Source: Euprymna scolopes (lineage: Eukaryota). From it: a stretch of 64,000 bases of DNA. Position 1 is the first letter of the stretch. The number at the start of each line of letters is the position of its first letter. A program made the position numbers and the translations under genes. Positions 1,075 through 63,215 of this stretch are shown one piece after another. The stretch lies in assembly GCA_053919585.1 (NCBI GenBank), contig CM132819.1. One strand, given 5' to 3'. Under the pieces are notes generated by a model that was not told the origin of the DNA, made no database searches, and saw nothing but the letters and a program-made list of their open reading frames with translations.

Positions 1075-1194
1075 GACAATTTTGTTCATCTGAAGCATCA
1101 GAACAATCAAATGTTTTGTCGCATTTCTTGCTAGCATCGATGCATTGTCCGTTTTTACATTCAAATTGGTTGGGTTTGCAACGTTGTGAAGTAG
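1075..1194 (-). CDS. LDLa exon (120 nt)
   Basis: CAG..GTAAGT; [39 protein letters not shown]. Confidence 0.9.
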
Positions 1195-4100: not shown

Positions 4101-7100
4101 AAATGGAAGAAAAAAAGCTTTTCAGAAATATTTTATAGAAAGATGAACGCAAAGAAAAAATGTGAAGGTAGAAGAGGTTTTAAAACGGAAGAATTAAATT
4201 TTATAAAAAAAAAGAATTACGATTATTGCTAAGAATTTAAATTTAATTATTAATAGTGTTTTAACTGTTTTTCTAAAATTACAATTATATCCTAACTACT
4301 GAATTCAAATAATTATATGCAAGAGAAAATACTTTTGGTTTAAAAAATCACGTCTGTATAAATTTTTTTCTTTTTTTTTTTTTTACTTTTGAAAAAGTTA
4401 TTTAGATTCTTGTTTTAAAGTTTATCAATCTTAAATTGTGTAAATTAATGCAATTTCGATATTTGCTAATCAACTTACAACAATCTTGTTCATCTGAAGC
4501 ATCAGAACAATCAAATGTTTGATCACATTTCTTGTTAGCATCGATGCATTGTCCGTTTTTACATTTGAATTGGTTGGGTTGGCAAAGTTGTGATGTGGCT
4601 GAGAAAAGGAGGTGGAAGAAAGAGAAAGGTGCAGTGCAAAGGAAAGTGAAATAGAAACAGAAAAAAATGGCAAGACAGAAGAAAATGAGAATTTTAAAAA
4701 AGGATTCATGAGATTTCTTGATTCACACTAAATTCATATTTTAGTACATTATTAAGATTTATTTAGGCATATATTATTTCCATAGAACAGGCATCCGATT
4801 TCAATCTGTATGAATGTCTTAAGAAAACCGTCTACTTCTTAAGATATAAAATTTACAAGATTAAAATTAAATGTAAAAGATGCTTCTTTGCAATAATCCT
4901 GCCGTTACAAAATGCTTGTTGGTACTTAAGCAGAATAAGGATTTTTCTATTGTTAGACTTTTTCGGGCAGTTTATGTAAAAATGCCGAAACACCGGGTCA
5001 ATAAAATCGCAGCAGCAAACGTCGTTTAAAACATTTGTCATCAACAAAAATAATCATTAAAAAAAAATCATACAAAATTTTTGTGTTTGCTATCAGTTGA
5101 TTTTATTTTAAAAAAAAAAAAAAAGTGAAAAATAATGAACCTTACCTTACAAGGAGTGTTTTTCTCTTGATTTGATATATAGTTTTCTTAGTTTTCTAAA
5201 AATTGTCCAATAAAACTTGTATAAAATTGTATATTTTTCATAACAAAAAGAAGTTGTTCTTAATTTAATTAATTTTTTTTATTGAATTATCTTCATAACA
5301 AAGAAAATGTTTTTCTATATAAAAAAATTGATCAGTGTTTGTGTGAGAAAAAAAAAAAAAAGATCACAAAATTTCGGTCGACATCTTCCAGCATTTTACA
5401 TAAATGCCCGGAAAATTCCGATGGTAGTATGGTCCTTATTCTGCATAAGTACCAGATTGTTTTATTTTCTAAATAATTCGACTTTTGGTGTAACTACTTC
5501 AACAGAGTCGTAAACCCTTAGAATCGAAATCTGTTTCAATAACATCATCATCATGAGCATAAACAAACAAGTAATTTTCAGTATTTTACTTCTGAATGTT
5601 ACTAGTGTTGGGACGATTAATCGGAATTGGAAATATTGTAACTTGTTAAGGTATTAAAATCAGTATTAGAAACGGAAATGTTTGTATGGATTTTCCGATA
5701 CCAAAAAAAAAAAAATATTTTAATTTTATTTTGCTTGTTTTTGTTTAAAACTATCTTCCATTACTAATAAATATTTATGGATTTTAAAACTAAAATTTAT
5801 AAATCATCTCCCACAATGTATTTTTATTTTATATTTGCGAAAATATATGCACATATTAAATGTTTTGAAAATAATCTGGAAAAAAAAAATCAACAACTCA
5901 AACTAAATATTTAGCGATTTTAAAAGAATTGGAATCAGGATTAGTAAAAATATTGGAATTGTCACATCACTACTTACTACATAATAGCACTATGAGAGTC
6001 GCCATGTTGTAAGCTGTATTATAACTACGGCAACAGAAAATGTTTAGTGTATAAGGTTTATGTGCACAAATACTTGAAAGCCCCAAAATATAAATGTGAG
6101 CGATGTGTGCTGCCATGTCAACATATAATTTCAGTATGTAATTAGACGAATGTTTGTCTGAGTACAGTTTGATAAAACTTATGTTCATTAACAAAGATTG
6201 AAATAAAGACCTATAGCTACAAAAAACTGATGTTTAAAAGTCGTTATTGTTATTTTGACCAACATTCTTTACATGAATTTGATCTTAGTAAATGTCTAAA
6301 ATATAAAGTTTAAGCTTAAGGAGCTTAAAGAAGAAATTGAAATTCAGGAAATCTTACTTAGTGTCTAATAACTATAAACCAAATTTAATGCAAATGTGAA
6401 ATATTTGAATTTTGAAATAAGTTGCACCTATATTATTTCCTCTAAAACCTCTTTGAACTACTCTAAACTAACTGAAATTTGAAGAATATTTATTGATTGA
6501 GATAAATGGCAACTAGGGGTGACTCCAACCCCACTCCATCAATCTCTGAAATTGGGACTCTTCTTAGCAAAATGTAAACTAAAGCTAATTGTTTATTAAA
6601 AATGCTTTGATATTAAAAAAAATAAACTTATGATTGGAGTATCTACATAAAAAAAAAAACAAATTCAGAAAATGAGATTTTTTTATATTAAAAACCTCCA
6701 AAACTAGTTTGTGCTTTTCTTTAATTACTTACTACAATTGGATTTATCTGGCCCATCGGAACAAGCATCTGAATCATCACATTTGTAGATAGCATTTACA
6801 CATTGTCCGTTTTTACATTCAAATTGGTTTTTACATTCAGATTGGCAATGTAATGCAGAGCCACCCCCTCCCCCAGTATAATTCTAATTAAAATATAACT
6901 CATTTGTTACATGACAATAACTAGATTTAATTACTTACTACAGTTGGATTCATCTGACCCATCGGAACAATCAACATAGTCATCACATTTGTAGCTAGCA
7001 TCTATGCATTGTCCGTTTTTACATTCAAATTGGTGAGCTGGGCAACGTTGTGAAGTAGCTGAGCAAGAGAGGTTAAATACAGAAAAATGTTAGGTGCAGT

Positions 7101-10100
7101 GCAAAAGGGAGATAAGTGAGCCGAAAAAATGTATACACAAAGAAAAGCAATGATTTTTTTTATTTACATTTGAGTATATATTTATTTTCATTAAATACGG
7201 TTATGTTTATTGAATCAAAATATCTTAAATATTTCACACATCTCTAACTACTATCAATGCTATCATATTGGAGGAGTGTGCTCACATGATAGATATAGCA
7301 TTTCCTTAACACATGACAATTGAAATATATCCAAAAAGCCACTGTATTTTTTTTTTAGACTTATTACATCATTTTGCCGGCTTTTCTCTATTAATGATTC
7401 CCTTATTTTAGTTCTTTAATCTTCACATTCCACAAGCGATTTTTCTGACAAAAAGTGAATTGCTGACCCATTGGAACAATCAACATAATCACATTTGTAG
7501 ACAGTATTTTTACATTGTTGGTTTTTACACTCAAATTGGTGAGCTGAGTAAATTGATATAGAGGCTGAAAGGTACACAAATGTTAGGTGCAGTGCAAAAT
7601 GGAGACAAGCATAGTAAAAAGAGAACGGATTTCAAGAAAGGGAGTGAAAAATATATAAATTACTTTTCTTTATGCAACCTGCATCTACCCGACGTTACCC
7701 AGGAATCATTTTACTGTTATGTTTGTTTCACTTATTGAATTTTCTCACATATTTTTGCCCTTTATCCAAACTGATTTCTTATGAGAAATATTTACATTTT
7801 TTAAAATATAATTAAACAATGGAATATTTTTATATAATAGTAGAGACTGAGATAATCTAAGGTTGCATCTATTTCGTGCACTAACATCAAAGTCAAGAAG
7901 GCATGCTTATAATAATAATAATAATTGCTATTTCACCCCAAATAAGGCACAGTGCCACTTAGATGTAAAGGGCTACTATTCGAGACATAATTTACAGGGA
8001 GTTGAGCAACAAGATATCTGTTCACATTACACTTGAACTTCTGCATGTCAGCACAGTAAGGGAAGCAGGAACCTGGGAGTGAATTTCAAAGTCTAGAAGT
8101 CCGAGAAAAGAAATAAGAGTAAAAGGCTTTCCAACATCTAGGGATCTCTACTGTGTAGGAGTGCGATTTTGCTGGTTGTTTGTCAGGGGTATTTACATTA
8201 AGGGCTTGGAGTTCGTCAGAACATCATCTATTTAAAATAATGCTAAAATAAGCACAAGCATGCAACATTTCATCGATGGGACAGGGGTTGGAGTTTGGTT
8301 GACAGAGCGGTACCTAGCTAATGATTCTTTGTCGAACCCTATCTTGGAAAAAGAGAGGCTAGTAGCAAATGCATCAGCTCACCTGTGGCAATAATACTCT
8401 CTACATGTTTTAAGTTAATTGAACATTGAACTTTACACAATACGCGACAACTTGTTTATATAATACTTATGCATATGCAATATCAGTCGTAAGGTTAATT
8501 AATACCCAATCAACTTACGACAATCTTGTTCATCTGAAGCATCAGAACAATCAAATGTTTTGTCACATTTCTTGTTAGCATCGATACATTGTCCATTTTT
8601 ACATCTGAAATGGTTTGGTTGACAACGTTGTGCAGTGGCTGAGTGAGTGAGAGGTGAAAGAAAGGTGCAGTGCATAGGAAGACGAGTGCAAATAATGTTA
8701 TATGAATTCAGTAAATGGTGAGAAGAATGAGAATTAAAGAATTGTTATTAAAGTCACTTTATTAAAGCATTAATTGTTAATAAAGTCACTAGATTTTTAT
8801 CAAAATAATTGAAAATAGTATGTCAAAGAACATTTTTTTGGTTTTGAGAAAGCAATTCTATATTTTGCAGCACTAAAAAATAGTTGACATTATGTTTGTA
8901 TCAATTAGAAATTGCATCTATTTATGCAGTAATCATTTACTACAATCTTGTTCATCTGATGCATCATAACAATCAAATATTCCGTCACATTTCTTGGTAG
9001 CATCGATGCATTGTCTTTTATATGTAGTATAAAGAAAACGGGATATGGTAGCTTATAAAAACTGTAAGCGTATTTAATATAGCAAAGACAAATTGAGATT
9101 ATAGCAGTCAGGTGCGTAAGTTATAACTTTTCTATATTTGTCAAAAGCAGAAATAAAACCTGGCTGAAGAATGAGTTCAGGTTTTGTTGAATGACGTAAG
9201 ACTGAGCACTGACCTAACAGATACTCTACAAAACAGCCATATTGGTTTCCAATTATGGACTTTAGAGTTTGATTAAAAAAATGTTTAAATGGAGTCCATA
9301 AGAAATCTAATCAACTTACGACAATCTTGTTCATCTGAAGCATCAGAACAATCAAATGTTTGGTCACATTTCTTGCTAATATCGATGCATTGTCCGTTTT
9401 TACATTCGAATTGGTTGGGTTGGCAACGTTGTGGTGTTGCTGAGTGAGTGAGAGGTGAAAGAAAGAAAGGTGCAGTGCATTGGAAAAAAAAGGAGTAAAA
9501 AAAAAAAAGACAAAAGCTTCCCTAAAGAAATGAGATTTTTAAGAAAACATGAAATTTATTGATTATCATTAAAGCTATTGATGATAAATATGATTGTCTT
9601 GAATATTTTAACTCTTTAATAACTGAAATATTTGCAACAGGTTTCATATCACATTTTGACAGATGTAGGCACAAACATAATAGAGCATATTCTTGCCTAG
9701 TTGGATTTTTGCAGATTTTTAATTTTACTTGTGTTAGATCCCACATAATAATCATGCATTATATTTCTGAAGAAATTGTACACGCCTTTACATTTTTTAA
9801 TCATTATATATATATATATATATATATATATAGCTGTACTAACAATTATTATTTAGATTTATTATTAAAAATTGTGTCGATTTATGTAATATATTTTCTC
9901 ATCAACTTACAACAATCTTGTTCATCTGATCCATCAGAGCAATCAAATGTTTTGTCACATTTTTTGCTAGCATCAATGCATTGTCCGTTTTTGCATTCAA
10001 ATTGGTTGGGTTGGCAACGTTGTGCAGTGGCTGGGTGAGTGAGAGGTAGAAAGAAAGAAAGAAAGGTGCAGTGCATAGGAAGACAAATTCAAAGAAAAAA

Positions 10101-16100: not shown

Positions 16101-16333
16101 AAATTTATTGATTTAAATTAAATCTATTAATAATGAATATATGGTTATCTTTAACAGTCTAACTCTTTAATAACTGCCAAATATTTGCAAAATCTCGCAT
16201 TCTGACAGACATAAGCACAAAAATAATGGGGCATATTATTCTTGCGATTTTTAATTTTACTTGTGTTTGATCCCAGTAATAATTAATCATGCATCATATT
16301 TTTGAAGAACGCATTTAAATTAAAAACAAAAAA

Positions 16334-16402
<69 letters not shown>

Positions 16403-17199
16403 CGCGCTGTACGAAAAAAATTTATTTAGATTTATTTAGTTATTGGAAATTGTGTCGATTTATGTAATAATCATATTTTCTAATTGACTTACAACAATCT
16501 TGTTCATCTGAAGCATCAGAACAATCAAATGTTTTGTCACATTTCTTGCTAGCATCGATGCATTGTCCGTTTTTACATTCAAACTGGTTAGGTCGGCAAC
16601 GTTGTGATGTGGCTGAGTGAGTGAGAGGTGAAAGAAAGGTGCAGTGCATAAGACGAGTGCAAAGAAAAGATTGTACAAAAAGAAGTTACTATAAGAAAGG
16701 ATTTATTAAGAATTAAAGCATCAATAACAATTTAAATTCAAGATTTTTTTTTCGTTAAAATTGTAATAGAAATATCTAATTAGAATATTTTGAATTTTAA
16801 ATGAAAATGAATTTGCATTAATTTTATTTCATGATTTCTGGGGGATTATGAAAATTAACCATCATAATTATGGAAAGATTTTTTTTTTTTTAATATTTAC
16901 GATTAAAATCAAAAAATAACACAGAAAAATGTCCACACATCAGTAAAACTCATCAGTGCAGTTGGACATACACCTTTCCGCAGTCGTGGATCCAACCTAT
17001 AACCATGTTAACAGTCGGCAGCCCTTAGCATCGGACTACGAATAAGTGCCTGTAAAGATTTCTTAAGTGTCTATTAAATTAAGACTTGCCGGTCGCACAA
17101 TGCTAAGACCATGAGTTTGTTTGCAAACAAACTTAATAGTTGGCTTTGTTTAGTTGCTTAAATATGCGTCGGATGAAACTATATTTACGAAGTGCTCAG

Positions 17200-17260
<61 letters not shown>

Positions 17261-29896: not shown

Positions 29897-29947
<51 letters not shown>

Positions 29948-30621: not shown

Positions 30622-30676
<55 letters not shown>

Positions 30677-32529: not shown

Positions 32530-32569
<40 letters not shown>

Positions 32570-35551: not shown

Positions 35552-35605
<54 letters not shown>

Positions 35606-41600: not shown

Positions 41601-42784
41601 GGTCCATTGCTGTTGACCTCGCTGTGGCTCAGAACTAATACAAAGAAAAATGAAGGATCAAAGTTCAATGTATCTAGTCAAATCTTTATATCAAGATAAA
41701 AATAATTGAAAAAGAAAAAATAAATAAAAACGATTTTAGATTAGGTTAACTAAATTAGAAAGAAACACATGTTGCATCATTTGGATTATTCAGACTACTG
41801 TTCTCATTTTAGATAGAACAACGGATATAAGTGCTGAATAATCAGTTCTAATGCCGTGCTTTTACAGATTGAAGATTTAATCCTGAGTACGGATGATACT
41901 TTTAATACAGTTACAATTTAGTTATGACCTCTACACCATCATGACTGAGGAATCAAGAGCAAGTTTCCATCATCATATTCGTATTACGTCCTTTTTATAT
42001 GCTGACAATTGACTTGCAAACTAACCTTTTTTGCTAGGCTTTTTAAATCACAATTTTTTTTGTCGTATTCTCCCATGATCTCCAATTAACTCCACTACCG
42101 CACGTGTTCTACATCTACTAACTTTAAAATTGTCATCCATTCCTTCACCAAGAATAACTTCCAAGATGAGAATAGAAAGCGAAAAAAAACAAAAAACAAA
42201 TACAAACTTGTTAATCTTTAACCGAAAAATTGGGAAATACAATAAACGAATGTTCCAAATTTGTTTATATTTTAGACTAGTCTGGGTGCCAGGTGTTTGT
42301 AGGTGTGTGTTTAGCAAAAAAAAAAAAAAGAAAAAAGTGGTACTAGGCAGGCAGGCAAGCTCGAACACATGACGCGAAAGTGCAAAAGAAAATGAAAGAA
42401 AGTCTGACATTTTACCACTACTACATGACGCGACCAGAAGTTTAAAGGGTTCAAATTTAATGTAGTCAAGATGACTTGCAGAAATCTTGTTGCTTTTAAA
42501 CCTCCCACGAAAGTAAATTAGACACAAGGTCGTTTTTAATATGGGGAGGGGGGTAGCTTCCCCCAAAATGGGGCACTCTGGTAGTATCCAAATAAATAGT
42601 AATTGTCTCAGTATGAAGGGTTACCCCTAGATAAATCAAGGACCAATTACAGAACATTATTCATACTACCTGGACCAAAGGCCAGGCGTTCGCATTCGAA
42701 TAGTTCCGCTTTATTTATACGAAATAGACAAACAAACACAGGAGATGATGAAGCACGTTCGGAATTTTTTTTTTTTTTAACTTG

Positions 42785-42818
<34 letters not shown>

Positions 42819-47772: not shown

Positions 47773-47816
<44 letters not shown>

Positions 47817-53800: not shown

Positions 53801-56800
53801 AAGAGAGGTTAAATACAGAAAAATGTTAGGTGCAGTGCAAAAGGGAGATAAGTGAGCCGAAAAAATGTATACACAAAGAAAAGTAATGATTTTTTTATTT
53901 ACATTTGAGTATATATTTATTTCCATTAAGTATGATTGTTTATTGAATCAAAATATATATATTAAATATTTCACACATCTCTAACTACTGCCAATGCTAT
54001 CATATTGGAGGAGTGTGCTCACATGGTAGATATAGCATTTCCTTGACACATGACAATCGGAATATCCAAAAAGACACTATATTTTTTAGTGAAAACAAAA
54101 GCAAAAATATAGTAATGAACGTGTCTCCGAGGGGCACAGGCCTATAATACATTCCTCTGTAAAGGGCACTTTTAAAACAGGAGTAAAAGGGGTAAGTGCT
54201 TAGGCACCCCCTCCCCTCTGCATGTCCTTGCTCTACAAGCTATGAAGCTTTAAGATGAAGTAAAGCATATTACTTCCTCAGAAGATTGATTGTTCATGTC
54301 ACATCGGGGTAACCATTGTAAAAATAAGGCATTTGGTGTAAAATTAAATTCAATGGCAAAATTTATTTTAGTATATTTTACTAACTTTATTTACCATCTT
54401 TCCCCAACCAACAAAAGCTAAGAAAATTTTTTTTACATCAAATGTTACAATAGAGTTAATTTTGAGTTGGACATGGCACGCTTTGTGTTCCATAAGGTTG
54501 ACATCAACAGTTCAACTGCTAAGAAGCAGAAAAATATAAGTAGTCATGCAGAAATGCATCTCACACAAAGTGTTTTCATTGAATAATAGATCAATCACAC
54601 TGTACACACACAACAATGTACACACACAACAATGTAGAAACATTAGCTTAACTGGAAGGAAAATAGTTCATCCAAATGTAACGGTTACTCTCAATAAAAC
54701 AGAGTTTATTTGAGATAGTAAAGGCCAATTGAGATTATAGCAGTAAGATGTAGAATCATAATGTTTATATATTTGCCAAAAGCAGAAATAAGACCTGGCT
54801 GAAAAATCAAATATCCAGCTTTTGTTTAATGAAGTTAGACTGAGCATAATTAAAGCTCTGATCTTACAGGTGCTCTCCACATCAACTATATTGGTTGCCA
54901 GTTATGAACTTTACTGTTCAATTTAAAAAAAAAATGCACAAGTAGAGTCGATTAGAAATCTAATCTGCTTAATAATATTAAAGTGGAGCATTTTTACAAA
55001 TTATTGAAAAATGTTTGCATTGATCAAAAAGAAGTCAGTTTAATACTTATTTTGTTATATATATATATATATATAACATTTTTAATTTAATAGTAACTTT
55101 TACATAATGACTTTTTATGACCATTAAACTGACAACAATCTTGTTCATCAGAACAATCAAATGTTTGGTCACATTTCTTGCGAGCATCGATACATTGTCC
55201 GTTTTTACATTCGAATTGGTTAAATTGGCAACGTTGTGTCGTGGCTGGGCAAGAATAGTTAAAGATAGAAAAATGTTAGGTGCAGTGCAGAAGGGAAAGA
55301 GAAAAAAAGTGCAATAAAAACAGCTGAGATTGAAGAAAAGAAAGAAAATTCATGCTCATGTGAATTGTAAAAGATTCAGTTGGTCTCTTTTACAGCATAT
55401 CAATCCTTTTAATTTTAGTATTACTTAGATTTGGACTACTGTTCTAATTCTTGAATGTTATTCTCACAATGTTTTAGCCGATTTAACTTCCAACCTCCTT
55501 CCAGTGTATCTTGTCGAACGCAAGCATCTTTTTGTTAAACTCTGCAATCTGAAAGGAATTTCAAATAGAATCCTTTATTTAATCCACAGGGGTAGCATGC
55601 TCTCATTCCATCTGCTATGAAGAGTAATGTATTTCACAATTATATTGTGAGTATTGGCTGCATTGCAGATGTATGTTCAACTTCCAAAAGAGTGTCACAT
55701 AGAATTGAATTTTACGTAGTACTTTATTCGTCACTCCACTGGTCCTTGAGCATGCTACCCCTGTGGATTAAATAATGGGTTACATTCGAAATACTGTTCA
55801 GATTTCAGAGTCTGACTACATCTGAAGAAGGTTGGCGATTACATCAGTCGAAACACGAGAATAATACTCAAGATAAGAACAGTAGTTCCATTAATTCAAA
55901 CTATCTTTTCTTGTAAATTTAATGTCAAATTAAAATCCATTGTGAAGGGAGATAAGCACATTAAAAACTCAGATTAAAAAAATAAATTTTGGATGTGAAT
56001 TAAAGCAAATTAGGGTTTTTACTTAATTTTGTTAAAAAATCTCATTCTTTATAAAACTATAAAAAAGGCATTAAAAAAATTAAGATTTTCTGAGGAGACA
56101 TTTAAAATGATAATCTAAATCGATTTTTCTCAAATTTTTGACCTTACATAATACTTCAAATATCACAAGAACCTCCTCCATTCAATGTAAAAAAAAATAG
56201 AATTAAATACTATATCTTTCATTGTAAATATAGTAATTAGTGGTTTATTTAAAAATTAATAGGTTTACAAGAAGGTTCTGGCAGAATTTTTAATTACAAA
56301 TAAGTTTTCGTTATAATACCTTTATTTTATATATCATTTTAAAGAACGTTTTCGTTCTATTTATTGATTTAAATTACAATCATTTTAAACCAATTGTCTT
56401 CTTTTTCAGAACGTTGTATAGTATAGTATATGTATCTTTGAATTGATTTATGTAAAAATTGATATTTCTTTGTCATTTTTTTGCAATCTTTATAAAATTC
56501 TTAACTAACTCTTCAAATAAATGACATATCTCCAGAACCACCTGTCACTCGATGTAAATACATAGAATGAAATATATCTTATTTTATTTTCATTATAGTT
56601 TACATGTGTGTGTATATATATATATATACACACATATATATATTTGAATAACTGGTTTATATAAAAATTAATATTTCTTTGTCATTTTTTTATCTAATGC
56701 TAAATAAAAACTTACTGTTTGTTTATAATACTTTATTAGGAAGTTTTAATTGATGCAAAAAAAAAAAAAAAAAAAAAAAGTTTTAAGCTGAAGCCAAAAT

Positions 56801-59800
56801 TTCACCTAAGTCTCATCTGCTGAATGTACACAGATTAGTAACTGTTACCATACAAAAATCACTAAACATATTCCCAAGTATATATTTTTTAAATTATAGT
56901 TAGATATGATATCTATATAAAAATATATTGCACATGGTCAGCAATATTATATGAAATAAGATAAACCAAAAGAGCGTTAGTGTATCTCATTTATTCTGCC
57001 AGAAAATTTTGAAACTTTTTGTGAAATATTGGAGTTCCAGAAAACGCTGGTTATAATTTTAACAGATGTACCATTTAAAAATAGCAAATGGCAGACTGCT
57101 AATATCTGTTTCTTTTGTAAAAAAAAAAAATAATTCTAGCGGGTCAATTATTAAAAATTCTATAAATTACAGAAAATGATCTAATGGATCATTTTCTGTA
57201 ATTTATAGAATTTTTACTAATTTCGACATGACATGTAAGTACGTAATGTTTTTATCTAATATGCACTTTCTGAAATCCTATTATTATGCACACGTAATGT
57301 AAATGTAAAAGATAATGTCTTCATTATCAAATATTTTATCCTCATATTCATAGTTGTTCTTTCACCACGTTACGACTGATTCATTCTATGGCTTTCTTCA
57401 TGCATATAACCACCTGAAAAGGCCAGAGGAGGAGTTGGCCGAAATGTGGTGAAGCAACCACAACTATGAAAATTAGGATAACAGTTCGGGGGAAAAAATG
57501 AATACACAAAGTCTTTGTTATTAAACTGATGAAACAAATCAGAAAATATGTACAAAAGAATTCAGAAGCTTAAACTAGATTTTCCATAGGATATATTTTT
57601 GGATTACTTAGTAATTAATAGAAGAACTTAAACCACATCTCCCATAGCACGATATATTTTTGGATTACTTAATAGAGCATGCTCTTCATAAAATATATCA
57701 ATGGATTTTATTTAGCATGCTACTTACGACATTCTAACTCATCTGAAGCATCAGAACAATCAAATGTTTCATCACATTTCTTGCTTCCCTCGATACATTG
57801 TCCATTCTTACATTCGAACTGGTTAGGTTGGCAACGTTGTGAAATGGCTGCTTGAAGGGTGAAAGAAATGAAAGGTGCAGTGCATAGAAAGACAAGTGCA
57901 AAAAAATGGAATGAAAATCGAAAATGCTGTGAGAAAAAAAAAAAACAAAAAAACGATGAAATTTTGTCTATTCACCCACTCAATAAGTTGGTAAAAATTT
58001 ATTCTATAACTAAATTTCATTAACATGTAATTTACTAATGCGAAAAGATTTTTTCTCCAATTTTTGGAACAAACATTCGTGAAGCCCATCAGAATAGTTA
58101 AACAAAACTTAAAATGTTTAAATAATTAAACACGATTTAATTCAAACAAATCAAAAATCAAATAATGGATCTATTTAAATTTTCTTTTGAAAAAAGATAA
58201 TTGTTTAATGTGACATTTTATGTACTCAATATTTGGATTTCATTTTTGTTGCTACTTACTACAATCTTGTTCGTCTGATCCATCTGAACAATCAAATGTT
58301 TGGTCACATTTCTTGTTAGCATCGATGCATTGCCCGTTTTTACATTCAAACTGGTTGGGTTGGCAATGTGCAGTGGCTGAGAGTGAAAGAGTGAAAGAAG
58401 GAAAGAAGGAATGGTGCAGTGCATAGGAAGATCAGTGTAAAGAGTGTGACATAAGAAAATGGTGAGAAAATGAGATTTATTGATAAGAATTAAATTGGTT
58501 ATATTTTATGGTTTGTTACATCTAGTCAAGAAAAGTGAAAAAATGAATTATATAACCAGATTTTATGAATTTGAAATTCGTCTGAAAAGATATGCTCGAC
58601 ACATATTGATGAATAATAATAAAAAAAAAAGGATCTTGTCCAGAATTCCCCAGGATTAAAAGAAAAATCTGTTTGATGTACATAATCGTAACGAAACCAA
58701 AATATATTTTAAAAATCATGTAAATTGATCAAGTAGTTTAAATAATTTTTTAAGCGATTAGGAATTCATAAGCATTACAGCGGAAGTCTATTAATTATAA
58801 ATTATTGTTGAGTTATCTCCCTTTGATTTAATAATTTTTTTTTTTTTTTAAATGGTGATACTCATAAAAATTGATTTTCTTATTAAAAAAAACTACTTCA
58901 TCGATTTGTGTGATTTTTGGAGTATATTTTCGTTTCAGCACAGATACACACATACACATTTTTTTTAATATAGGGGAATTCAGGACAAGAACTGAAAATA
59001 AATTTAAAATTAGAAGTTAGAATTAAAACTGTAGCAAAATTCCAAAATAGAGGGTTAATTTTGGGACACCATTTATTATTACTTCATGATTTTTATTTTA
59101 TTATTGCTACTACTTACGACAAAACAGTTCATCTGTAGAATCGGAACAGTCGAATCGGTGGTCACATTTCTTGCTAGCGTCAATACATTGTCCATTATCA
59201 CATTCAAACTGGTTGGGTTGGCAACGTTGTGCAGCGGCTGAGAGTGTGAGGGGGGAAAGAAATGAAGAGTGCAGTGCATAGAAGACAAGTGAAAAGAAAA
59301 CATGAAATGAATTAAGAAAATGGAAAGAAAATGAGATTTTATGAAATGAGATCTATTGATGAGAATTAAAGTTTGTATTGTTTGGATTATTTGGATTATT
59401 TAGACTACTGTTCTAATTCTTGAGTTATTTTTACAACTTTTCAGATGATGTAACCTTCGACCTTTAGGCATATCTTGTTGAGCTCTTGAATCTTTCTGTA
59501 ACAGTGCGTATGGGCGCGTGTGAGAACATAGCAGCACCTGTTAAAGCACGAATGCAAATTAGCAAGTGTGCACAAGCTTGCACCACAAGAAAAGGAGAAA
59601 AAATACACCATTTGGTCAACAGGAGAAGCAAGTTGCGTGCTGAGGAAAATGGACATGTGAATACGAGGGTGAAAAAGTGCTGGATAACACCAACATCAGG
59701 TGGCTGGGGGGACAAAGACTTAAAAAGCAAGTGTGTGCAAAAAGACTTTTGTAAGATAATGAAATGCCTTGTTTTGGAAGAACCACAAATGAATGTTCAT

Positions 59801-61148
59801 TTGCACTTTAAAAAATGTCGAGTCTGATTTTTCTTTATTTTTTTTTTCCTTTGCAACAAAGTATTAAACAATGTGTGGGTTCGAAATGTAACGACACTGT
59901 TCAAGTATCACGGCTATGTTACATTTTAATCAAATTCAGAAATCGGGATAGAATTTCGATTACAACCCTTTATTTAATTCATATGGGTAGCATGCTCTTG
60001 TTCTGTCAGCCATGGCCAGGTAAATGTCTTAATTCTTAATATCACCTGTGCTGAGGATTGAACCTTCAATCTTCAGAAGAGTGCCACTTACAACTGAATT
60101 TTACCATATTTCTGAAGTAGTAAGATTCCTTAACTCAAAGTGAGAACAGTAGTCCGAATAATCCAAATACAAATTGTCAATCCTCATCTAAAAAATTCAG
60201 AAACGAGAAATATTAATATTTATGAAAGCCCCTTTCCAAATGAAAATTAATTGAGTCAAAATAATTGAATTTGAATAATCGCAGAACATTTTAAGTTTAA
60301 GAAATGAAATTTTTGATTTTGCAACGCTAAAAAAATAATTGACACTATTATAACTTTTGGTTTATTTAGTCATCAGAAATGATGCCCATTTATGTAATAA
60401 TCATATTCGCTAATCAACTTACAACAATCTTGTTCATCTGAACCGTCAGAACAATCAAATGTTTGGTCACATTTTTTGCTAGCCTTGATACATTGTCCGT
60501 TTTTACATTCAAATTGGTTGGGTTGACAACGTTGTGATGTGGCTGAGTGAGTGAGAGGTGAAAGAAAGAGAAAGGTGCAGTGCATAATAAAAAAAGTAAA
60601 AAAGAAAAAAGCTTACCTAAAGTAATGAGATTTTAAAAAATATTTAGAAAATTTATTGATAGGAATTAGTTATTAATGATCTTGAACGTTCTAATTCTGT
60701 ACTAACTCAAATATTTGCAACAAGTTTCATCTCATATTTCGACTGGTGTATTATTTTTGTCTCCTTGACTTTTGTTTAACACCCACATAATTAATCATGC
60801 ATCATATTTGAAGCCGCACGAGTCGTTAAACTTTAAAAATCTTTCTATAAGATATAGATGTACAAATAACATTAACCCCATTTGATGTTTGGTATGTATA
60901 TGGCTTCATCACCAATCATTATATCTTCAATATTGGATTCATCATTATTATCAGGTTTAATTAGACATATAAAAATGAAAAAATGCAATTAAAAAAAGTA
61001 GTTGTACACATGTACCGGCGTTGCCCGGGATAGAATATAAAGGGATAATTTGAATATAAAAATGAAATTTAATTTTCTGAAAAAAAAAATTGTTATTTAT
61101 TTCAATTCTAATTAAAAAATAATTTGATATTATTTGAAAATTAAGGTG

Positions 61149-61189
<41 letters not shown>

Positions 61190-63215
61190 TAATAATTAAC
61201 ATTTTCAAATGTAAAAAAAGAAACTTTATAATATATTTCAATTCTTTTTAAGATAGTTTAATTTATATAAGTTGTTACAGGAAAAACCCGAAAACAAAAA
61301 AATGTTCAAAATAAAACGGTATATAATTGTTGTCCTACTGGTTGAAATGCGAGAAAAAACTAATTGCAAAAATTGGTAGCCATAACAAAGTTAAAATATT
61401 CAAAATAACCAATTATGTTTTTAAATATGAATTAATTTTTATTTAATAAAGTATATTATAATTGACTAAGAAAAAAATTTAGTTATGAATAATTGTTTAA
61501 TTTAAAATACTGAAGAATTAGTTTGAATTTCTTATCAAATTTAATGTATTATTAAATTATGCTAATCTACTTACTACAATTGGCTTCGTCTGAAGCATCA
61601 GAACAATCAAATGTTTGATCACATTTCTTGCTAGCATCGATACATTGTCCGTTTTTACATCTGAATTGGTTAGGTTGACAACGTTTTCCAGTGGCTGAGT
61701 TGAAGGGGTGAAATAAACGAAAGGTGTAGTACATAAGAAAGGTGCAGTGCAAAGAGAGATAAGTGCAAAGAGATCGGATATAGTTATTTTAATTAAAATA
61801 GTATAGTATCAATTTATAATTTATTGCTTTCACAGGATTTAATTTCTCAACAATTTTACTTTTTTATAGTCAATCATTTTTTTTTTTTATTAGATTAATG
61901 TAGTTTAATAAATTTTATATAGATGTATATTACATAGCAATTTAATCATGTAATATTTTATAGTAGGATAGTAGTTTGCTTGAAGCATTGTTTAGTGTGT
62001 ATACAAAAGTAATTTATGGAAAAGCAAAAAACAATGCGAAGGTGTAACGGATAAGCACAAACTGAGAAAAGACATTTAACAGTGGAAGGAGTTTTATAGT
62101 TTCCATGTTTTTACTAATACAATATATTTTTTTATATAACAGTTTTTTATATTACAATCTTGCATCGGTGTTTGATCGAAGTTTCCGTATAACATAATAT
62201 TTCAGGAATAAATTTTCCTTCTTCAGATGTGTTCAAGGATTGATATTCATTTGATTTGTTGACTGCTACAAGTGACAATATACACATTCAAACAGAAACC
62301 AACGCAGCGATCTGATGCTGTGATGTGTAAACTGTCAAATCACTTGAACATCATTTTTAAAGTTAACTTTAGTTCAAACTAGCATTTCGGCCCGGCATTG
62401 CCCGGGTGTTTGGAGGTGTATGCTGAGCAAAAAAAAAAGAGGTAATTTTTTAAACTTTGACCCCTATTATGTCCTTAACATTTATTGTTTTGCTTTGGGC
62501 TCAAATAAAGTTATTAAGTTAGATCCATGCCCAAGGAACCAATATCTAAAATGTCAAGTGTTTAGACCCCAAATTATCGGAGGAGTTTGGTAGAGCTCAC
62601 AAAGGTCAAATCGTTAACCTTTTACTCCTTAACAGCGAAATTTCTGGCCGAAACCCAATCACATCGATTTTTCCAAATCTCAGTACCCTGTATATCAAAT
62701 TTCGAGTCTGTAGACTAAAAATTGACAGAGTTATTGCATAGGGAAATGCACACAAACACAGACACGTTCACTTTTATAGATATATAGATAAAGTGAAAAT
62801 TGATAATAAATATGTTGTCCAAAATATTTCCACATTAGATAGAAATCCTTTGTGAATAAACATTATGCTGACATTTAATTAATTTGTCTCAGCTTAAAAT
62901 TTTTTTTTTTTTTAAGTTTTAAGCTTTGTATATCTCATGTTCTCCAAATGATGTCATTTAGATTTGGTTTATGTCAACAAAAACGGTATTTTTTAAATGA
63001 AACAAAATTCATATTTGTGACATTGAAATGACTGAAATACAACAATAATCGTCATTAAAATAAGACATGCATTTCTGAGGCCACTGATTACTTACTACAG
63101 TTGGCTTCATCTGACCCATCGGAACAATCAACGTAATCATCGCATTTGTAGATAGCATTTATACATTGTCCGTTTTTACATTCAAATTGGTTATCTCGGC
63201 AACGTGATGGAGAAG
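1075..63215 (-). CDS. Partial multi-exon gene: uninterrupted array of >=41 LDLa (LDL receptor class A) modules, one per exon; no start, stop or other domain in window
   Basis: Repeated ~120-nt units bounded by YAG acceptors and GTAAGT donors on the minus strand, translating to C-x6-C-x4-C-I-x5-C-D-x3-D-C-x-D-x-S-D-E-x2-C (LDLa signature); all phase 1-1. Confidence 0.93.
1732..1851 (-). CDS. LDLa exon (120 nt)
   Basis: TAG..GTAAGT; [39 protein letters not shown]. Confidence 0.9.
2200..2915 (+). mobile_element. 5'-truncated CR1/L2-like LINE (C-terminal ORF2, 3'UTR, A-rich tail), intronic, antisense to host gene
   Basis: Open frame to 2814: [68 protein letters not shown], typical post-RT region; GC-richer than flanks; A-rich tail ~2895-2920. 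Confidence 0.88.
3045..3164 (-). CDS. LDLa exon (120 nt)
   Basis: TAG..GTAAGT; [39 protein letters not shown]. Confidence 0.9.
3502..3575 (-). pseudogene. Relic of a deleted LDLa exon (decayed acceptor region and first codons only)
   Basis: taacattgcgatgtgacagagtga...aaggtgtagtgt aligns by eye to the consensus caacgttgtgatgtggctgagtga...aaggtgcagtgca; the following intron resembles 9520-9660. Confidence 0.6.
3916..4035 (-). CDS. LDLa exon (120 nt)
   Basis: TAG..GTAAGT; [39 protein letters not shown]. Confidence 0.9.
4479..4598 (-). CDS. LDLa exon (120 nt)
   Basis: CAG..GTAAGT; [39 protein letters not shown]. Confidence 0.9.
6733..6862 (-). pseudogene. Decayed Y-type LDLa pseudo-exon
   Basis: [39 protein letters not shown]: internal duplication, SDE motif lost; donor intact but acceptor and pyrimidine tract absent. 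Confidence 0.75.
6939..7058 (-). CDS. LDLa exon, Y-type (120 nt)
   Basis: CAG..GTAAGT; [39 protein letters not shown]. Confidence 0.9.
7460..7564 (-). pseudogene. Decayed Y-type LDLa pseudo-exon
   Basis: [29 protein letters not shown]: Cys1 lost, 3' end and donor missing; acceptor CAG and upstream TGCACTGCAC retained. Confidence 0.75.
7930..8410 (-). mobile_element. Degenerate copy of the CR1/L2-like LINE 3' end
   Basis: Reverse complement matches 2385-2890 (e.g. gacatgcagaagttcaagtgtaa, gagtattattgccac). Confidence 0.8.
8519..8638 (-). CDS. LDLa exon (120 nt)
   Basis: CAG..GTAAGT; [39 protein letters not shown]. Confidence 0.9.
8941..9015 (-). pseudogene. 5'-truncated LDLa pseudo-exon
   Basis: Only [24 protein letters not shown] remains; donor GTAAAT; first third of the exon and the normal acceptor deleted. 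Confidence 0.75.
9320..9439 (-). CDS. LDLa exon (120 nt)
   Basis: CAG..GTAAGT; [39 protein letters not shown]. Confidence 0.9.
9911..10030 (-). CDS. LDLa exon, B-type (120 nt)
   Basis: CAG..GTAAGT; [39 protein letters not shown]. Confidence 0.9.
10300..10655. mobile_element. Old MITE-like inverted-repeat element, duplicated with the repeat unit
   Basis: atgaaaagactttt..atttacgattaaaagcaaaa versus ttttgcttttaatcttgcatatt..aaaagtcttctcttcat; homologues near 16870-17480, 24020-24170, 29770-31200, 38660 and 49430. Confidence 0.55.
11137..11256 (-). CDS. LDLa exon, A-type (120 nt)
   Basis: CAG..GTAAGT; [39 protein letters not shown]. Confidence 0.9.
11257..11316 (-). promoter_or_regulatory. Representative CAC/GCAC-rich intronic element upstream of the 3' splice site (present before most exons)
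   Basis: Sense strand UUGCACUUGUCUUUCUAUGCACUGCACCUUUCUUUUUCUUUCACCUCUCACUCACCCAG; UGCACUGCAC lies ~25-45 nt before the AG in 30 of 41 exons; regulatory role is inferred. Confidence 0.6.
12110..12229 (-). CDS. LDLa exon, Y-type (120 nt)
   Basis: CAG..GTAAGT; [39 protein letters not shown]. Confidence 0.9.
12738..12881. other. Assembly gap (144 N)
   Basis: Run of n. Confidence 1.
13189..13750 (-). mobile_element. CR1/L2-like LINE 3' fragment inserted only in the lowest-coordinate repeat unit
   Basis: Poly-T then reverse complement of the LINE 3'UTR/ORF ([23 protein letters not shown]; PESILYLY-like); homologous sites at ~20980, 27565, 35560 and 45240 are empty. Confidence 0.82.
15428..15550 (-). 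CDS. LDLa exon, T-type (123 nt)
   Basis: CAG..GTAAGT; [40 protein letters not shown]. Confidence 0.9.
15885..16004 (-). CDS. LDLa exon, B-type (120 nt); upstream GCAC element absent
   Basis: CAG..GTAAGT; [39 protein letters not shown]. Confidence 0.88.
16337..16402. repeat. (TA)n(GA)n microsatellite; other (TA)n tracts at ~548, 9806, 17202, 29890, 30627, 47762 and 61152
   Basis: Read directly from the sequence. Confidence 0.95.
16493..16612 (-). CDS. LDLa exon, B-type (120 nt)
   Basis: CAG..GTAAGT; [39 protein letters not shown]. Confidence 0.9.
17961..18080 (-). CDS. LDLa exon, A-type (120 nt)
   Basis: CAG..GTAAGT; [39 protein letters not shown]. Confidence 0.9.
20061..20180 (-). CDS. 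LDLa exon, Y-type (120 nt)
   Basis: CAG..GTAAGT; [39 protein letters not shown]. Confidence 0.9.
22572..22694 (-). CDS. LDLa exon, T-type (123 nt)
   Basis: CAG..GTAAGT; [40 protein letters not shown]. Confidence 0.9.
23060..23179 (-). pseudogene. Full-length LDLa pseudo-exon with both splice sites mutated
   Basis: Acceptor CAG>CAC, donor GTAAGT>GCAAGC, extra Cys ([16 protein letters not shown]), upstream element eroded. Confidence 0.82.
23643..23762 (-). CDS. LDLa exon, B-type (120 nt)
   Basis: CAG..GTAAGT; [39 protein letters not shown]. Confidence 0.9.
24617..24736 (-). CDS. LDLa exon, A-type (120 nt)
   Basis: CAG..GTAAGT; [39 protein letters not shown]. Confidence 0.9.
26911..27030 (-). 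CDS. LDLa exon, Y-type (120 nt)
   Basis: CAG..GTAAGT; [39 protein letters not shown]. Confidence 0.9.
28560..28790 (-). mobile_element. Degenerate RTE-like LINE C-terminal fragment, present in each repeat unit (also ~14640, 21840, 36480, 46060)
   Basis: [41 protein letters not shown] resembles the RTE C-terminal RRLRWFGHV.RM.E..W.K motif. Confidence 0.6.
29344..29466 (-). CDS. LDLa exon, chimeric B/T-type (123 nt)
   Basis: CAG..GTAAGT; [40 protein letters not shown]. Confidence 0.9.
29947..30627. mobile_element. Penelope-like relic with ~150-bp inverted repeats, embedded in (TA)n
   Basis: ~29962-30120 inverted against ~30470-30627; interior reads [16 protein letters not shown], like a GIY-YIG endonuclease C-terminus. 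Confidence 0.6.
31663..31782 (-). CDS. LDLa exon, A-type (120 nt)
   Basis: CAG..GTAAGT; [39 protein letters not shown]. Confidence 0.9.
33692..34180. mobile_element. Unit-specific ~490-bp insertion with an internal ~160-bp direct repeat; family unassigned
   Basis: Interrupts ttcttatgaaaa..aagtgtatttg, which is contiguous in other units (~11670, 19630, 26480). Confidence 0.65.
34600..34719 (-). CDS. LDLa exon, Y-type (120 nt)
   Basis: CAG..GTAAGT; [39 protein letters not shown]. Confidence 0.9.
37248..37370 (-). CDS. LDLa exon, T-type (123 nt)
   Basis: CAG..GTAAGT; [40 protein letters not shown]. Confidence 0.9.
37710..37829 (-). CDS. LDLa exon, chimeric T/B-type (120 nt)
   Basis: CAG..GTAAGT; [39 protein letters not shown]. 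Confidence 0.9.
38241..38360 (-). CDS. LDLa exon, B-type (120 nt)
   Basis: CAG..GTAAGT; [39 protein letters not shown]. Confidence 0.9.
39632..39816. repeat. ~65-bp inverted repeat with ~50-bp spacer
   Basis: tttacaaatgaatggacgtaagaatcagacgaaaacaaaatccaattgatcagtactaaaacgcct versus its near reverse complement at 39750-39816. Confidence 0.85.
40490..40609 (-). CDS. LDLa exon, A-type (120 nt)
   Basis: CAG..GTAAGT; [39 protein letters not shown]. Confidence 0.9.
40744..40927. mobile_element. 184-bp MITE with ~28-bp TIRs and 8-bp TSD (Merlin-like GG termini)
   Basis: TIR ggtgctaatgcagagagtgatccg / cggatcactctctgcatgagtacc; TSD ttagaacg / ttagaaag; empty site ctaaattagaaagaaacat at ~18225 and ~31905. 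Confidence 0.85.
42277..43844 (-). mobile_element. Non-autonomous Helitron-like element with tandemly reiterated ~680-bp 3' segment
   Basis: Minus strand reads A|TCTATATA...CTAG|T; ~42277-42960 repeated at ~42960-43630, third CTAG end at ~43630; absent from other units. Confidence 0.7.
44237..44356 (-). CDS. LDLa exon, Y-type (120 nt)
   Basis: CAG..GTAAGT; [39 protein letters not shown]. Confidence 0.9.
46825..46947 (-). CDS. LDLa exon, T-type (123 nt)
   Basis: CAG..GTAAGT; [40 protein letters not shown]. Confidence 0.9.
47314..47433 (-). CDS. LDLa exon (120 nt)
   Basis: CAG..GTAAGT; [39 protein letters not shown]. Confidence 0.9.
48561..48680 (-). CDS. LDLa exon (120 nt)
   Basis: TAG..GTAAGT; [39 protein letters not shown]. 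Confidence 0.88.
49054..49173 (-). CDS. LDLa exon (120 nt)
   Basis: CAG..GTAAGT; [39 protein letters not shown]. Confidence 0.9.
49821..49940 (-). CDS. LDLa exon (120 nt)
   Basis: CAG..GTAAGT; [39 protein letters not shown]. Confidence 0.9.
50150..50560 (-). mobile_element. Highly degenerate CR1/L2-like LINE 3' fragment
   Basis: Scattered similarity to the 2200-2915 element (tattgttgccatatct, aagctgcagccc, gtagaaatctccaga). Confidence 0.5.
50760..51196 (+). mobile_element. Helitron-like non-autonomous relic related to 42277-43844, opposite orientation
   Basis: gcctgcctgcctactaccacttttt..aaacacc..ggcacccagg is the reverse complement of ~42280-42360. Confidence 0.5.
51270..51872 (+). mobile_element. 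Degenerate CR1/L2-like LINE 3' fragment
   Basis: aaaggtaggctccct..gagtattgttgccacatctggg..[16 protein letters not shown]..catgcagaaatttaagt..gtggcaatataccttgtttgggatgaa match 2298-2885. Confidence 0.75.
53400..53515. repeat. Short dispersed repeat, inverted copy of ~100-205
   Basis: accacttatcacggcctagaggctactcaaggataagg versus ccttatcctcgagtggcctcttggccttgataagtggt. Confidence 0.65.
53675..53794 (-). CDS. LDLa exon, Y-type (120 nt), identical to 6939-7058
   Basis: CAG..GTAAGT; [39 protein letters not shown]. Confidence 0.9.
55134..55244 (-). CDS. LDLa exon with 9-nt in-frame deletion (111 nt); possibly decaying
   Basis: CAG..GTCAGT; [36 protein letters not shown]. Confidence 0.55.
55432..55890. 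mobile_element. Nested inverted-repeat element (Penelope-like or foldback relic); relative at ~59390-60170
   Basis: Outer actactgttctaattcttga / tcaagataagaacagtagt; inner atttaatccacaggggtagcatgctc / gagcatgctacccctgtggattaaat. Confidence 0.6.
57146..57222. repeat. Perfect 30-bp-stem palindrome with 5-nt loop
   Basis: taaaaattctataaattacagaaaatgatc-taatg-gatcattttctgtaatttatagaattttta. Confidence 0.9.
57728..57847 (-). CDS. LDLa exon (120 nt)
   Basis: CAG..GTAAGT; [39 protein letters not shown]. Confidence 0.9.
58260..58376 (-). CDS. LDLa exon (117 nt; linker one codon shorter)
   Basis: CAG..GTAAGT; [38 protein letters not shown]. Confidence 0.88.
59118..59237 (-). CDS. LDLa exon (120 nt), divergent
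   Basis: CAG..GTAAGT; [39 protein letters not shown]. Confidence 0.9.
60423..60542 (-). CDS. LDLa exon (120 nt)
   Basis: CAG..GTAAGT; [39 protein letters not shown]. Confidence 0.9.
61575..61694 (-). CDS. LDLa exon (120 nt)
   Basis: CAG..GTAAGT; [39 protein letters not shown]. Confidence 0.9.
62379..62788 (-). mobile_element. Non-autonomous Helitron-like element (410 bp)
   Basis: Minus strand A|TCTATATA...hairpin cccgggcaatgccggg...CTAG|T; shares gtatatcaaatttcgagtctgtagact block with ~43660-43844. Confidence 0.75.
63096..63215 (-). CDS. LDLa exon, Y-type (120 nt); first exon in transcription order within the window
   Basis: CAG..GTAAGT; [39 protein letters not shown]. Confidence 0.9.

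What the first reader, a model, noticed from the sequence alone, without database searches (positions are those of the whole stretch)
1075..63215. Giant array of >=41 interchangeable LDLa cassette exons: candidate combinatorial or Dscam-like splicing system, or a very long LDLa-only rod
Seen: 41 splice-competent one-domain exons over 62 kb with no other domain between them, all phase 1-1. Each ends in C/T/A and begins with C-N, so every possible junction gives Pro/Ser/Thr and never a stop. Known: LDLR-family clusters hold roughly 2-12 consecutive LDLa modules broken up by EGF/YWTD domains, so an unbroken run of 41 or more is far outside that pattern; Dscam-type arrays are tandem paralogous cassette exons. 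Inference: either all exons are joined into a ~1640-aa LDLa rod, or subsets are chosen to give length- and sequence-variable isoforms. The sequence alone cannot separate these, and phase 1-1 is also the ordinary state for LDLa exons.
Basis: partly seen in the sequence, partly recalled or inferred. Interest (0 to 1): 0.9.

Follow-up and report, generated by a model that had tools for sequence, protein, structure and literature searches.

The report
Giant tandem LDLa exon array
A 62-kb stretch of one unannotated gene, probably from a mollusc, consists only of 40 near-identical one-domain LDLa exons that most likely splice in order into a calcium-binding rod of at least 1,600 residues; it is the longest unbroken LDLa run I could find, but nothing points to a Dscam-like diversity system.

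Summary
On the minus strand, between 1075 and 63215, lie 40 canonical LDLa exons of 117-123 nt. All are phase 1-1, all have GTAAGT donors, and each holds one Pfam PF00057 module. There is also one borderline exon, two copies with intact reading frames but dead splice sites, and three relics. No other domain lies between them. The assembly gap sits inside an intron, and its flanks are colinear with three paralogous units.

The array grew by tandem duplication of a 7-9.6 kb multi-exon unit. Copies are 80-86% identical including introns. Exons are under purifying selection (pN/pS 0.15-0.3). RNA contigs show splice joints exactly at the predicted borders, but the partners could not be assigned. 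A related genome carries the same kind of array.

Arthropod perlecan/Trol and LRP2-like models have unbroken runs of 18-27 modules, and their isoforms skip single LDLa modules. Forty is still the largest run I found.

A Dscam-like choice is not supported. The modules average 79% pairwise identity, all exon lengths are multiples of three, splice sites are uniformly strong, introns are long, and I found no docking/selector complementarity. The most likely reading is serial inclusion with occasional frame-neutral skipping. The splicing pattern itself remains untested.

The parts
1075..63215 (-). Whole array as seen in the window: 40 canonical single-module LDLa exons in eight repeat units. Exon numbers follow transcription order, from high to low coordinates. 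It probably continues past both window ends.
57728..63215 (-). Unit a, exons 1-6: 63096-63215 (B type), 61575-61694 (A type), 60423-60542, 59118-59237, 58260-58376 (117 nt), 57728-57847. These are the most diverged exons; none is more than 92% identical to any other copy.
   Evidence: splice joints land on 59237, 60423 and 63096
46825..53794 (-). Unit b, exons 7-12: 53675-53794 (B), 49821-49940, 49054-49173, 48561-48680, 47314-47433, 46825-46947 (123-nt T type).
   Evidence: exon 7 is identical to exon 36
37248..44356 (-). Unit c, exons 13-17: 44237-44356 (B), 40490-40609 (A), 38241-38360, 37710-37829, 37248-37370 (T).
29344..34719 (-). Unit d, exons 18-20: 34600-34719 (B), 31663-31782 (A), 29344-29466 (T).
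22572..27030 (-). Unit e, exons 21-23 and 25: 26911-27030 (B), 24617-24736 (A), 23643-23762, 22572-22694 (T). The splice-dead copy 24 lies between exons 23 and 25.
15428..20180 (-). Unit f, exons 26-30: 20061-20180 (B), 17961-18080 (A), 16493-16612, 15885-16004, 15428-15550 (T).
8519..12229 (-). Unit g, exons 31-35: 12110-12229 (B), 11137-11256 (A), 9911-10030, 9320-9439, 8519-8638.
1075..7058 (-). Unit h, exons 36 and 38-42: 6939-7058 (B), 4479-4598, 3916-4035, 3045-3164, 1732-1851, 1075-1194.
55134..55244 (-). Borderline exon: CAG acceptor, 111 nt, phase 1-1, three residues missing from the calcium-binding loop, donor GTCAGT.
23061..23165 (-). Copy 24: intact six-Cys reading frame, but the acceptor is CAC (no AG) and the donor is GCAAGC. 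Probably no longer spliced in.
6734..6835 (-). Copy 37: 34-residue core with the D-E of the calcium cage lost and no acceptor. It lies inside the intron just downstream of exon 36.
7463..7541 (-). Frameshifted relic of a B-type exon.
8942..9015 (-). Relic holding only the 3' half of an exon, with no acceptor.
12738..12881 (.). Assembly gap (N) inside the intron between exons 30 and 31. Left unfilled.
   Evidence: flanks colinear with units at 20181-20880, 34720-35527 and 44357-45237

Best explanation
The window is an internal piece of one very large, publicly unannotated gene on the minus strand, probably of a mollusc. The piece is made only of tandemly duplicated exons, each encoding one LDL-receptor class A (LDLa) module plus a five-residue linker. 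Shown: the array grew by repeated tandem duplication of a multi-exon unit of 7-9.6 kb, ordered as a B-type exon, an A-type exon, one to four Q-type exons and a 123-nt T-type exon. The copies have been kept as coding sequence by purifying selection. A few copies are decaying. Splicing happens at the predicted borders. Inferred: the exons are mostly joined in genomic order into an unbroken, strongly acidic array of at least 1,600 residues and 40 calcium-binding modules. This array would act as a long multivalent rod or binding platform in a secreted, matrix or receptor protein. Occasional frame-neutral skipping of single modules would occur as a by-product, as in perlecan-like genes.
For: All 42 modules lie on one strand, and 40 have canonical phase 1-1 borders. 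All 40 donors are GTAAGT, pyrimidine tracts average 0.82, and every acceptor is C/T-AG. The six Cys and the four acidic calcium ligands are invariant. Pfam scores are 48-50 bits. Units are colinear at 80-86% identity including introns, and each exon's nearest relative is the same-position exon of another unit. Exons are 94-96% identical against 76-91% for adjacent intron; pS is 0.10-0.14 and pN 0.02-0.04. The conceptual join gives 1603 aa with no stop, pI 4.4 and net charge about -106. RNA contigs show joints exactly at exon borders 59237, 60423 and 63096. A related genome has the same exon type and borders on 236-kb and 258-kb contigs, with only LDLa-bearing ORFs around them. Uniformly strong splice signals and the lack of UGCAUG enrichment fit constitutive exons.
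Against: No transcript spanning several identifiable exons was obtained. The joints seen have short sides (21-25 nt) and fit several exon pairs. One polyA run had almost no depth on the exons (X23). RNA-run contigs also cover introns colinearly, so DNA carry-over or pre-mRNA is present. The gene's ends, signal peptide and other domains are outside the window. No multi-module product of this gene or an orthologue exists in the protein collections searched, so there is no gene model to lean on. Annotated isoforms of long LDLa arrays elsewhere do skip modules.
Confidence: 0.6

Rival explanations
1. Regulated combinatorial cassette use. Subsets of the 40 exons are included in a tissue- or stage-specific way, giving isoforms of different length and valency, as in the annotated isoforms of arthropod perlecan-like genes.
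For: Every exon is symmetric (phase 1-1, length a multiple of three) and any junction gives Thr/Ser/Pro. Spider perlecan-like RefSeq isoforms differ by exactly one 37-40-aa six-Cys module at four different positions, or by two adjacent modules. A herring LRP2-like isoform lacks 219 aa with 30 Cys. Mercenaria isoforms X4 and X5 differ by about one module. Splice-dead copy 24 shows that the array tolerates the loss of a module.
Against: Splice sites are uniformly strong with no class-specific weakening, and there is no UGCAUG enrichment. All 40 exons are equally well conserved. No non-adjacent joint could be assigned with confidence.
Confidence: 0.22
2. Dscam-like mutually exclusive choice. One exon, or one per unit, is selected per transcript through competing RNA structures, generating a recognition repertoire.
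For: The array consists of tandem paralogous exons of equal size and phase. Tandem exon duplication is often linked to mutually exclusive choice (PMC9013439).
Against: Mean pairwise identity is 79% and only 38 distinct peptides exist, with a conservative class structure, so there is little diversity to select. pN/pS is below 1, so there is no sign of diversifying selection. Exon lengths are multiples of three, so double inclusion would not be punished. Introns are at least 334 nt. The only conserved intronic island has no complementary partner. Long inverted repeats are transposon copies or (TA)n runs, and they do not recur at equivalent positions in each unit. A docking site outside the window cannot be excluded.
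Confidence: 0.03
3. A tandem cluster of separate small genes, one per repeat unit, each encoding a protein of 3-6 LDLa modules.
For: The higher-order unit structure has long introns of 2.2-3.9 kb at unit borders. Short LDLa-only secreted proteins are annotated in other invertebrates.
Against: T-type exons keep perfect donors and B-type exons keep strong acceptors in the same phase. No conserved coding island that could be a first or last exon lies in the unit-border introns.
Confidence: 0.05
4. A decaying or silent exon array: a pseudogenised segment, or an artefact of assembling repeats.
For: Six defective or fragmentary copies are present. There is an assembly gap. No annotated product exists. 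Depth is near zero in one polyA run.
Against: Forty of 46 copies are intact, with pN/pS of 0.15-0.3. Copies are 80-86% identical, not 99-100%, so they are not assembly duplicates. Splice joints are seen in RNA runs. The array is conserved in a related genome at 73-90% protein identity.
Confidence: 0.05

Closest known systems
Domain II (LDLa region) of invertebrate perlecan / Trol, e.g. tick XP_075744885.1 and spider XP_035226040.1 with its isoforms
   Same: Both have long unbroken runs of LDLa modules with short linkers, 27 and 24 modules by my count. Annotated isoforms differ by whole single modules. The best per-module identity to this array is 66%, the highest of any hit.
   Different: Those runs are 24-27 modules with about 46% internal identity. 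They sit next to Ig and laminin-type domains. Here there are 40 or more modules at 79% mean identity in a higher-order repeat, and no other domain is visible in 64 kb. Orthology is not shown.
LRP2/megalin-like receptors, including crinoid XP_033115105.1
   Same: The LDLa modules have the same cysteine and calcium-cage pattern, and solved LRP2 structures are the best PDB matches. The crinoid model has runs of 16 and 22 modules with uniform 4-residue linkers and 74% internal identity, which is a comparable recent tandem expansion.
   Different: Classical LRPs break their LDLa clusters (up to 11 modules) with EGF and YWTD propeller domains. None is present in this window.
LDLa-only or LDLa-dominated secreted proteins of invertebrates (Oscarella XP_065835527.1, Lineus XP_064649717.1, Pomacea PVD30337.1 and XP_025094410.1)
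   Same: Pfam finds only PF00057 in them, with 11-19 modules, and some have signal peptides. This is the architecture the window would give if no other domain exists.
   Different: They are two to four times shorter. Their modules are at most 58% identical to these. Their function is unknown.
Dscam1 mutually exclusive exon clusters
   Same: Both are tandem arrays of paralogous exons of equal phase.
   Different: Dscam variants are diverse and are chosen one per cluster through docking/selector RNA pairing. Here the exons are near-identical and symmetric, and no such pairing is detectable.
Super-repeat exon blocks of giant modular proteins (titin, nebulin, obscurin)
   Same: Multi-exon blocks are duplicated in tandem, with one domain per symmetric exon. 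Length isoforms arise by skipping runs of exons (PMC9013439 for obscurin and nebulin as duplication hot spots; the rest is my own knowledge).
   Different: Those are intracellular Ig/Fn3 or nebulin repeats, not extracellular calcium-binding LDLa modules.

Membership tests
LDL-receptor class A domain (Pfam PF00057) | Score above the curated Pfam threshold | tested here: met
   49.6 and 48.0 bits against a cut-off of 24.1 for a B-type and a Q-type exon
LDL-receptor class A domain (Pfam PF00057) | Six cysteines in canonical spacing, plus the acidic calcium cage (D..D, D..DE) | tested here: met
   C5, C12, C17, C24, C30, C39 and D25, D29, D35, E36 are invariant in all 40 exons. They align residue for residue with solved LRP2 modules.
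LDL-receptor class A domain (Pfam PF00057) | Aromatic (Trp) pocket residue two positions before the fourth Cys, used for lysine binding in classical ligand-binding modules | tested here: not met
   The residue is Lys in 32 modules and Tyr in the 8 B-type modules. This is a functional feature, not a fold-defining one. Some LRP2 modules also lack the Trp.
LDLR/LRP receptor family | LDLa clusters interrupted by EGF and YWTD beta-propeller domains; transmembrane segment | tested here: not met
   None was found in 64 kb. Regions outside the window are not testable.
Perlecan / Trol | LDLa region followed by Ig, laminin B/EGF and LamG domains | not testable with these tools
   The window holds only the LDLa exons, and attempts to see the flanks failed.
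Dscam-type mutually exclusive exon cluster | Tandem paralogous exons of the same size and phase | tested here: met
Dscam-type mutually exclusive exon cluster | Exactly one variant per cluster in each mRNA | tested here: inconclusive
   Exon-exon joints exist but the partners are ambiguous. They fit adjacent pairs such as 18-19 and 38-39, which would mean consecutive inclusion.
Dscam-type mutually exclusive exon cluster | Docking site and selector sequences able to base-pair | tested here: not met
   No significant complement to the conserved intronic island was found. Inverted repeats are transposon copies or (TA)n runs. A docking site outside the window remains untested.
Dscam-type mutually exclusive exon cluster | Substantial sequence diversity among variants | tested here: not met
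   Mean pairwise identity is 0.79 and pN/pS is 0.15-0.31.

The most novel reading that the evidence does not exclude
The array is a programmable-length module store. Regulated inclusion of different subsets or whole units sets the valency and reach of an extracellular binding rod in different tissues or in response to challenge. Unit copy number may also vary between individuals. This would be a new use of LDLa cassettes on a scale far beyond perlecan.
Probability: 0.15. Interest if true: 0.7.

Novelty: new member of a known kind. Interest (0 to 1): 0.4.

Why it matters
If the 40 or more modules are joined, this is the longest unbroken LDLa run on record among the best matches in 1.84 billion representative proteins; the next longest is 27. 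It is absent from public protein sets. It gives a clean natural example of how a higher-order repeat of symmetric one-domain exons builds a giant extracellular protein. It is also a tractable case for asking how splicing copes with dozens of near-identical exons. It corrects the idea that LDLa runs stop at about a dozen modules. It does not, on present evidence, open a new principle of diversity generation.

Tried and rejected
1. Reading the splicing pattern from public RNA data. The apparent exon 1 to exon 4 joint fits the adjacent pair 18-19 equally well.
2. Finding an annotated product. These searches found no protein with modules more than 66% identical: an exhaustive profile search, a region-restricted search with a stop-free exon stretch, and a profile with a long first row to widen the length range.
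3. Seeing beyond the window. Exact ORF look-ups near both ends were not on record. The related ENA contigs gave gene lists but no DNA. The scan's notes had nothing nearby.
4. Extra exons or domains in the introns. I found none.
5. Structured RNAs. Rfam gave nothing.
6. A class-specific UGCAUG code, a lead from another window of this genome. The motif is at background level here.
7. Docking/selector pairing. Not found.
8. Long-read cDNA runs. None was listed.
9. Literature on mollusc LDLa mega-arrays. Nothing specific turned up.
10. Structure prediction. I left it out because Pfam and PDB sequence matches already settle the fold, and a multi-module query has no reference to hand in.

Full report
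**What is there.** The window is AT-rich, about 31% GC. A six-frame scan for the six-cysteine LDLa pattern gave 42 hits, all on the minus strand. Forty of them sit in exons with a pyrimidine tract, a C/T-AG acceptor and a GTAAGT donor. Each exon starts with two bases (CC, CT, CA or CG) that complete a codon and ends with one extra base (A, T or C), so every intron is phase 1. Lengths are 120 nt in 34 exons, 123 nt in five and 117 nt in one.

Pfam PF00057 scores 48-50 bits against a cut-off of 24.1. All six cysteines and the four acidic calcium ligands are invariant across the 40 peptides. They align residue for residue with solved LRP2 modules.

A more sensitive sweep added four items:
- One borderline exon at 55134-55244. 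Its frame and acceptor are intact, but three residues of the calcium loop are lost and the donor is weaker.
- Three dead fragments.

Two of the 42 modules have intact reading frames but no usable splice sites.

**The gap.** The N run at 12738-12881 lies in the intron between exons 30 and 31. Sequence on both sides is colinear, in the same order and orientation, with three paralogous units. In those units the matching interval is 42-79 nt and contains no exon. Each exon is a self-contained phase 1-1 unit, so frame continuity does not depend on the gap. What cannot be excluded is that the assembler collapsed one or more whole units there.

**Nothing else between the exons.** The large intronic ORFs have no Pfam match. 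A five-way alignment of the repeat units shows identity peaks only at the LDLa exons and at one AT-rich island with stops in every frame. Rfam finds nothing. One intronic ORF looks like a retrotransposon tail, which is a weak lead only.

**How it arose.** Self-comparison shows a higher-order tandem repeat of 7-9.6 kb between about 9.3 and 47.5 kb. It is 80-86% identical across introns as well as exons. Each unit reads, in transcription order: a B-type exon (Tyr at the pocket position), an A-type exon, one to three Q-type exons and a 123-nt T-type exon. The class string is BAQQQQ BQQAQT BAQQT BAT BAQ-T BAQQT BAQQQ B-QQQQQ. Each exon's nearest relative is the same-position exon of another unit, not its neighbour. 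This is the signature of unit duplication by unequal crossing-over. The outer units (exons 1-12 and 36-42) are older, because only the exons and about 100 nt of flank still align. A 480-nt tract containing exons 7 and 36 is 95% identical over a distance of 47 kb, with the exons themselves identical. That suggests conversion or a local copy.

**Is it functional?** Within positional classes, exons are 94-96% identical while adjacent intron is 76-91% identical. pS is 0.10-0.14 and pN is 0.02-0.04. Over all pairs pN/pS is 0.31. Gene conversion alone would not lower pN relative to pS, so the copies are kept as coding sequence.

A related genome (ENA analysis ERZ21867824) carries ORFs with the same module, the same acceptor context and the same donor read-through, at 73-90% identity. 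A B-type exon is among them. They lie on contigs of 236 and 258 kb, and the only Pfam family among neighbouring calls is PF00057.

**RNA evidence.** RNA runs labelled mollusc or invertebrate metagenome, and runs of the coded organism, hold 20-49% of the sampled words of a stretch that is only 13% exon. When laid on 57700-63250, their contigs match at about 98-100% and cover exons and introns colinearly at low depth. So pre-mRNA or DNA carry-over is present.

Exon-containing bins are deeper than clean intron bins in the polyA run X4, but cross-matching of short contigs from the other exons inflates that figure.

Exon-exon joints do occur, and they fall exactly at predicted borders (59237, 60423, 63096). 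However, their shorter sides are only 21-25 nt, and the letters at the junction fit other exon pairs better. The apparent exon 1 to exon 4 joint matches the adjacent pair 18-19, with one mismatch per side and the observed CCA start. The exon 3 to exon 4 joints match pairs such as 38-39.

A polyA raw-read run (X23) had almost no depth on the exons. So splicing at the predicted sites is shown, but the order of joining is not.

**Comparison with what is known.** An exhaustive profile search of 1.84 billion representative proteins gave 19,708 hits. None resembled a close relative: the best score about 27 bits per repeat, whereas single related exons score 58-73 bits.

Among the 150 best hits, these are the longest unbroken LDLa runs:

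| Protein | Longest run (modules) |
|---|---|
| Tick Trol/perlecan | 27 |
| Two fish LRP2-like models | 25 and 25 |
| Spider perlecan-like | 24 |
| Crinoid LRP2-like (74% internal identity) | 22 |
| 6021-aa perlecan-like model | 18 |

Forty is still the maximum I found.

The eight full-length spider isoforms differ by exactly one 37-40-residue six-cysteine module at four different places, or by two adjacent modules. A herring isoform lacks about five modules.

LDLa-only proteins of 11-19 modules are annotated in a sponge, a nemertean and a snail. A second search tuned to 388-1234-residue proteins found nothing above 63% per-module identity. The gene is therefore unannotated in public protein sets.

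**Testing the Dscam idea.**
- Conceptual joining gives 1603 residues with no stop, 240 Cys, pI 4.4 and net charge near -106. All 1600 junctions are sense codons. This follows from common descent of the exons and is not evidence of design.
- Modules average 79% pairwise identity, with conservative, class-structured differences. That is a poor substrate for a recognition repertoire.
- Exon lengths are multiples of three, so double inclusion would not be punished.
- Introns are 334-3933 nt.
- All donors are perfect, and there is no UGCAUG enrichment: 5 sites against about 4 expected.
- The one conserved intronic island has four same-strand copies and no complementary partner.
- Long inverted repeats are opposed transposon copies or (TA)n runs.
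- A docking site outside the window remains possible.
- PMC9013439 links mutually exclusive choice to competing RNA structures. It also lists obscurin and nebulin, giant modular genes, among genes heavily affected by tandem exon duplication.

**Function (inferred).** The product would be a long acidic chain of calcium-stabilised modules with five-residue Thr/Ser/Pro-rich linkers. The classical lysine-binding pocket Trp is Lys in 32 modules and Tyr in 8. Ligand binding may therefore differ from LDLR-type modules. A structural or spacer role, or multivalent low-affinity binding, is my best guess.

**Verdict.** This is a real, selected and expressed LDLa mega-array, and a new, extreme member of a known kind. 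Serial inclusion with occasional skipping is the most likely reading (0.6). Regulated cassette use is possible (about 0.2). A Dscam-like choice is unlikely (about 0.03).

Noticed in passing
window 41170-41290, 32159-32252, 25094-25187, 18501-18580 (minus strand): An AT-rich non-coding island of 80-120 nt lies about 600-750 nt upstream of the A-type exon in four units. It is 92-95% identical between copies, while the surrounding intron is about 80%. It has stops in every frame, no Rfam match and no complementary partner. It may be a splicing or transcription element.
   Followed up: partly
window 2155-2814 (+), with opposed copies at 13188-13749 and 7922-8399: A 219-codon ORF antisense to the gene has no Pfam hit, and its atlas neighbours include reverse-transcriptase clusters. 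It is probably a non-LTR retrotransposon tail. One copy sits right next to the assembly gap. The opposed copies form the longest inverted repeats in the window.
   Followed up: partly
window 62350-62907, 58630-58815, 59932-60303: These intronic segments have summed word depths in RNA-run contigs that reach tens to hundreds of thousands in the deepest bins (62350-62907, 60118-60303), with poly(A)-like loose ends. They are probably abundant transcribed short interspersed repeats.
   Followed up: no
window 16337-16387 and 17202-17252; also 29882-29937 and 30626-30677: Long (TA)n runs flank exon 28 on both sides. Because they are self-complementary, they could loop the exon out of the pre-mRNA. 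A second pair lies within the intron upstream of exon 20.
   Followed up: no
window 6877-7352 and 53613-54087: A 480-nt tract is 95% identical over a distance of 47 kb, with exons 7 and 36 identical at all 120 nt. It is much more similar than the rest of those two units, which suggests gene conversion or a recent local copy.
   Followed up: partly
window 42289-43648: A tandem duplication of about 696 nt (75% identity) lies in a GC-richer insert specific to unit c. Same-strand ORFs of 101-172 codons there have low complexity. The two longest (172 and 126 codons) were scanned against Pfam and have no match.
   Followed up: partly
window 39632-39815, 55534-55816 and 30043-30544: Local fold-back structures with arms of 61-69 nt at 84-93% complementarity, probably miniature inverted-repeat elements inside introns.
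   Followed up: no
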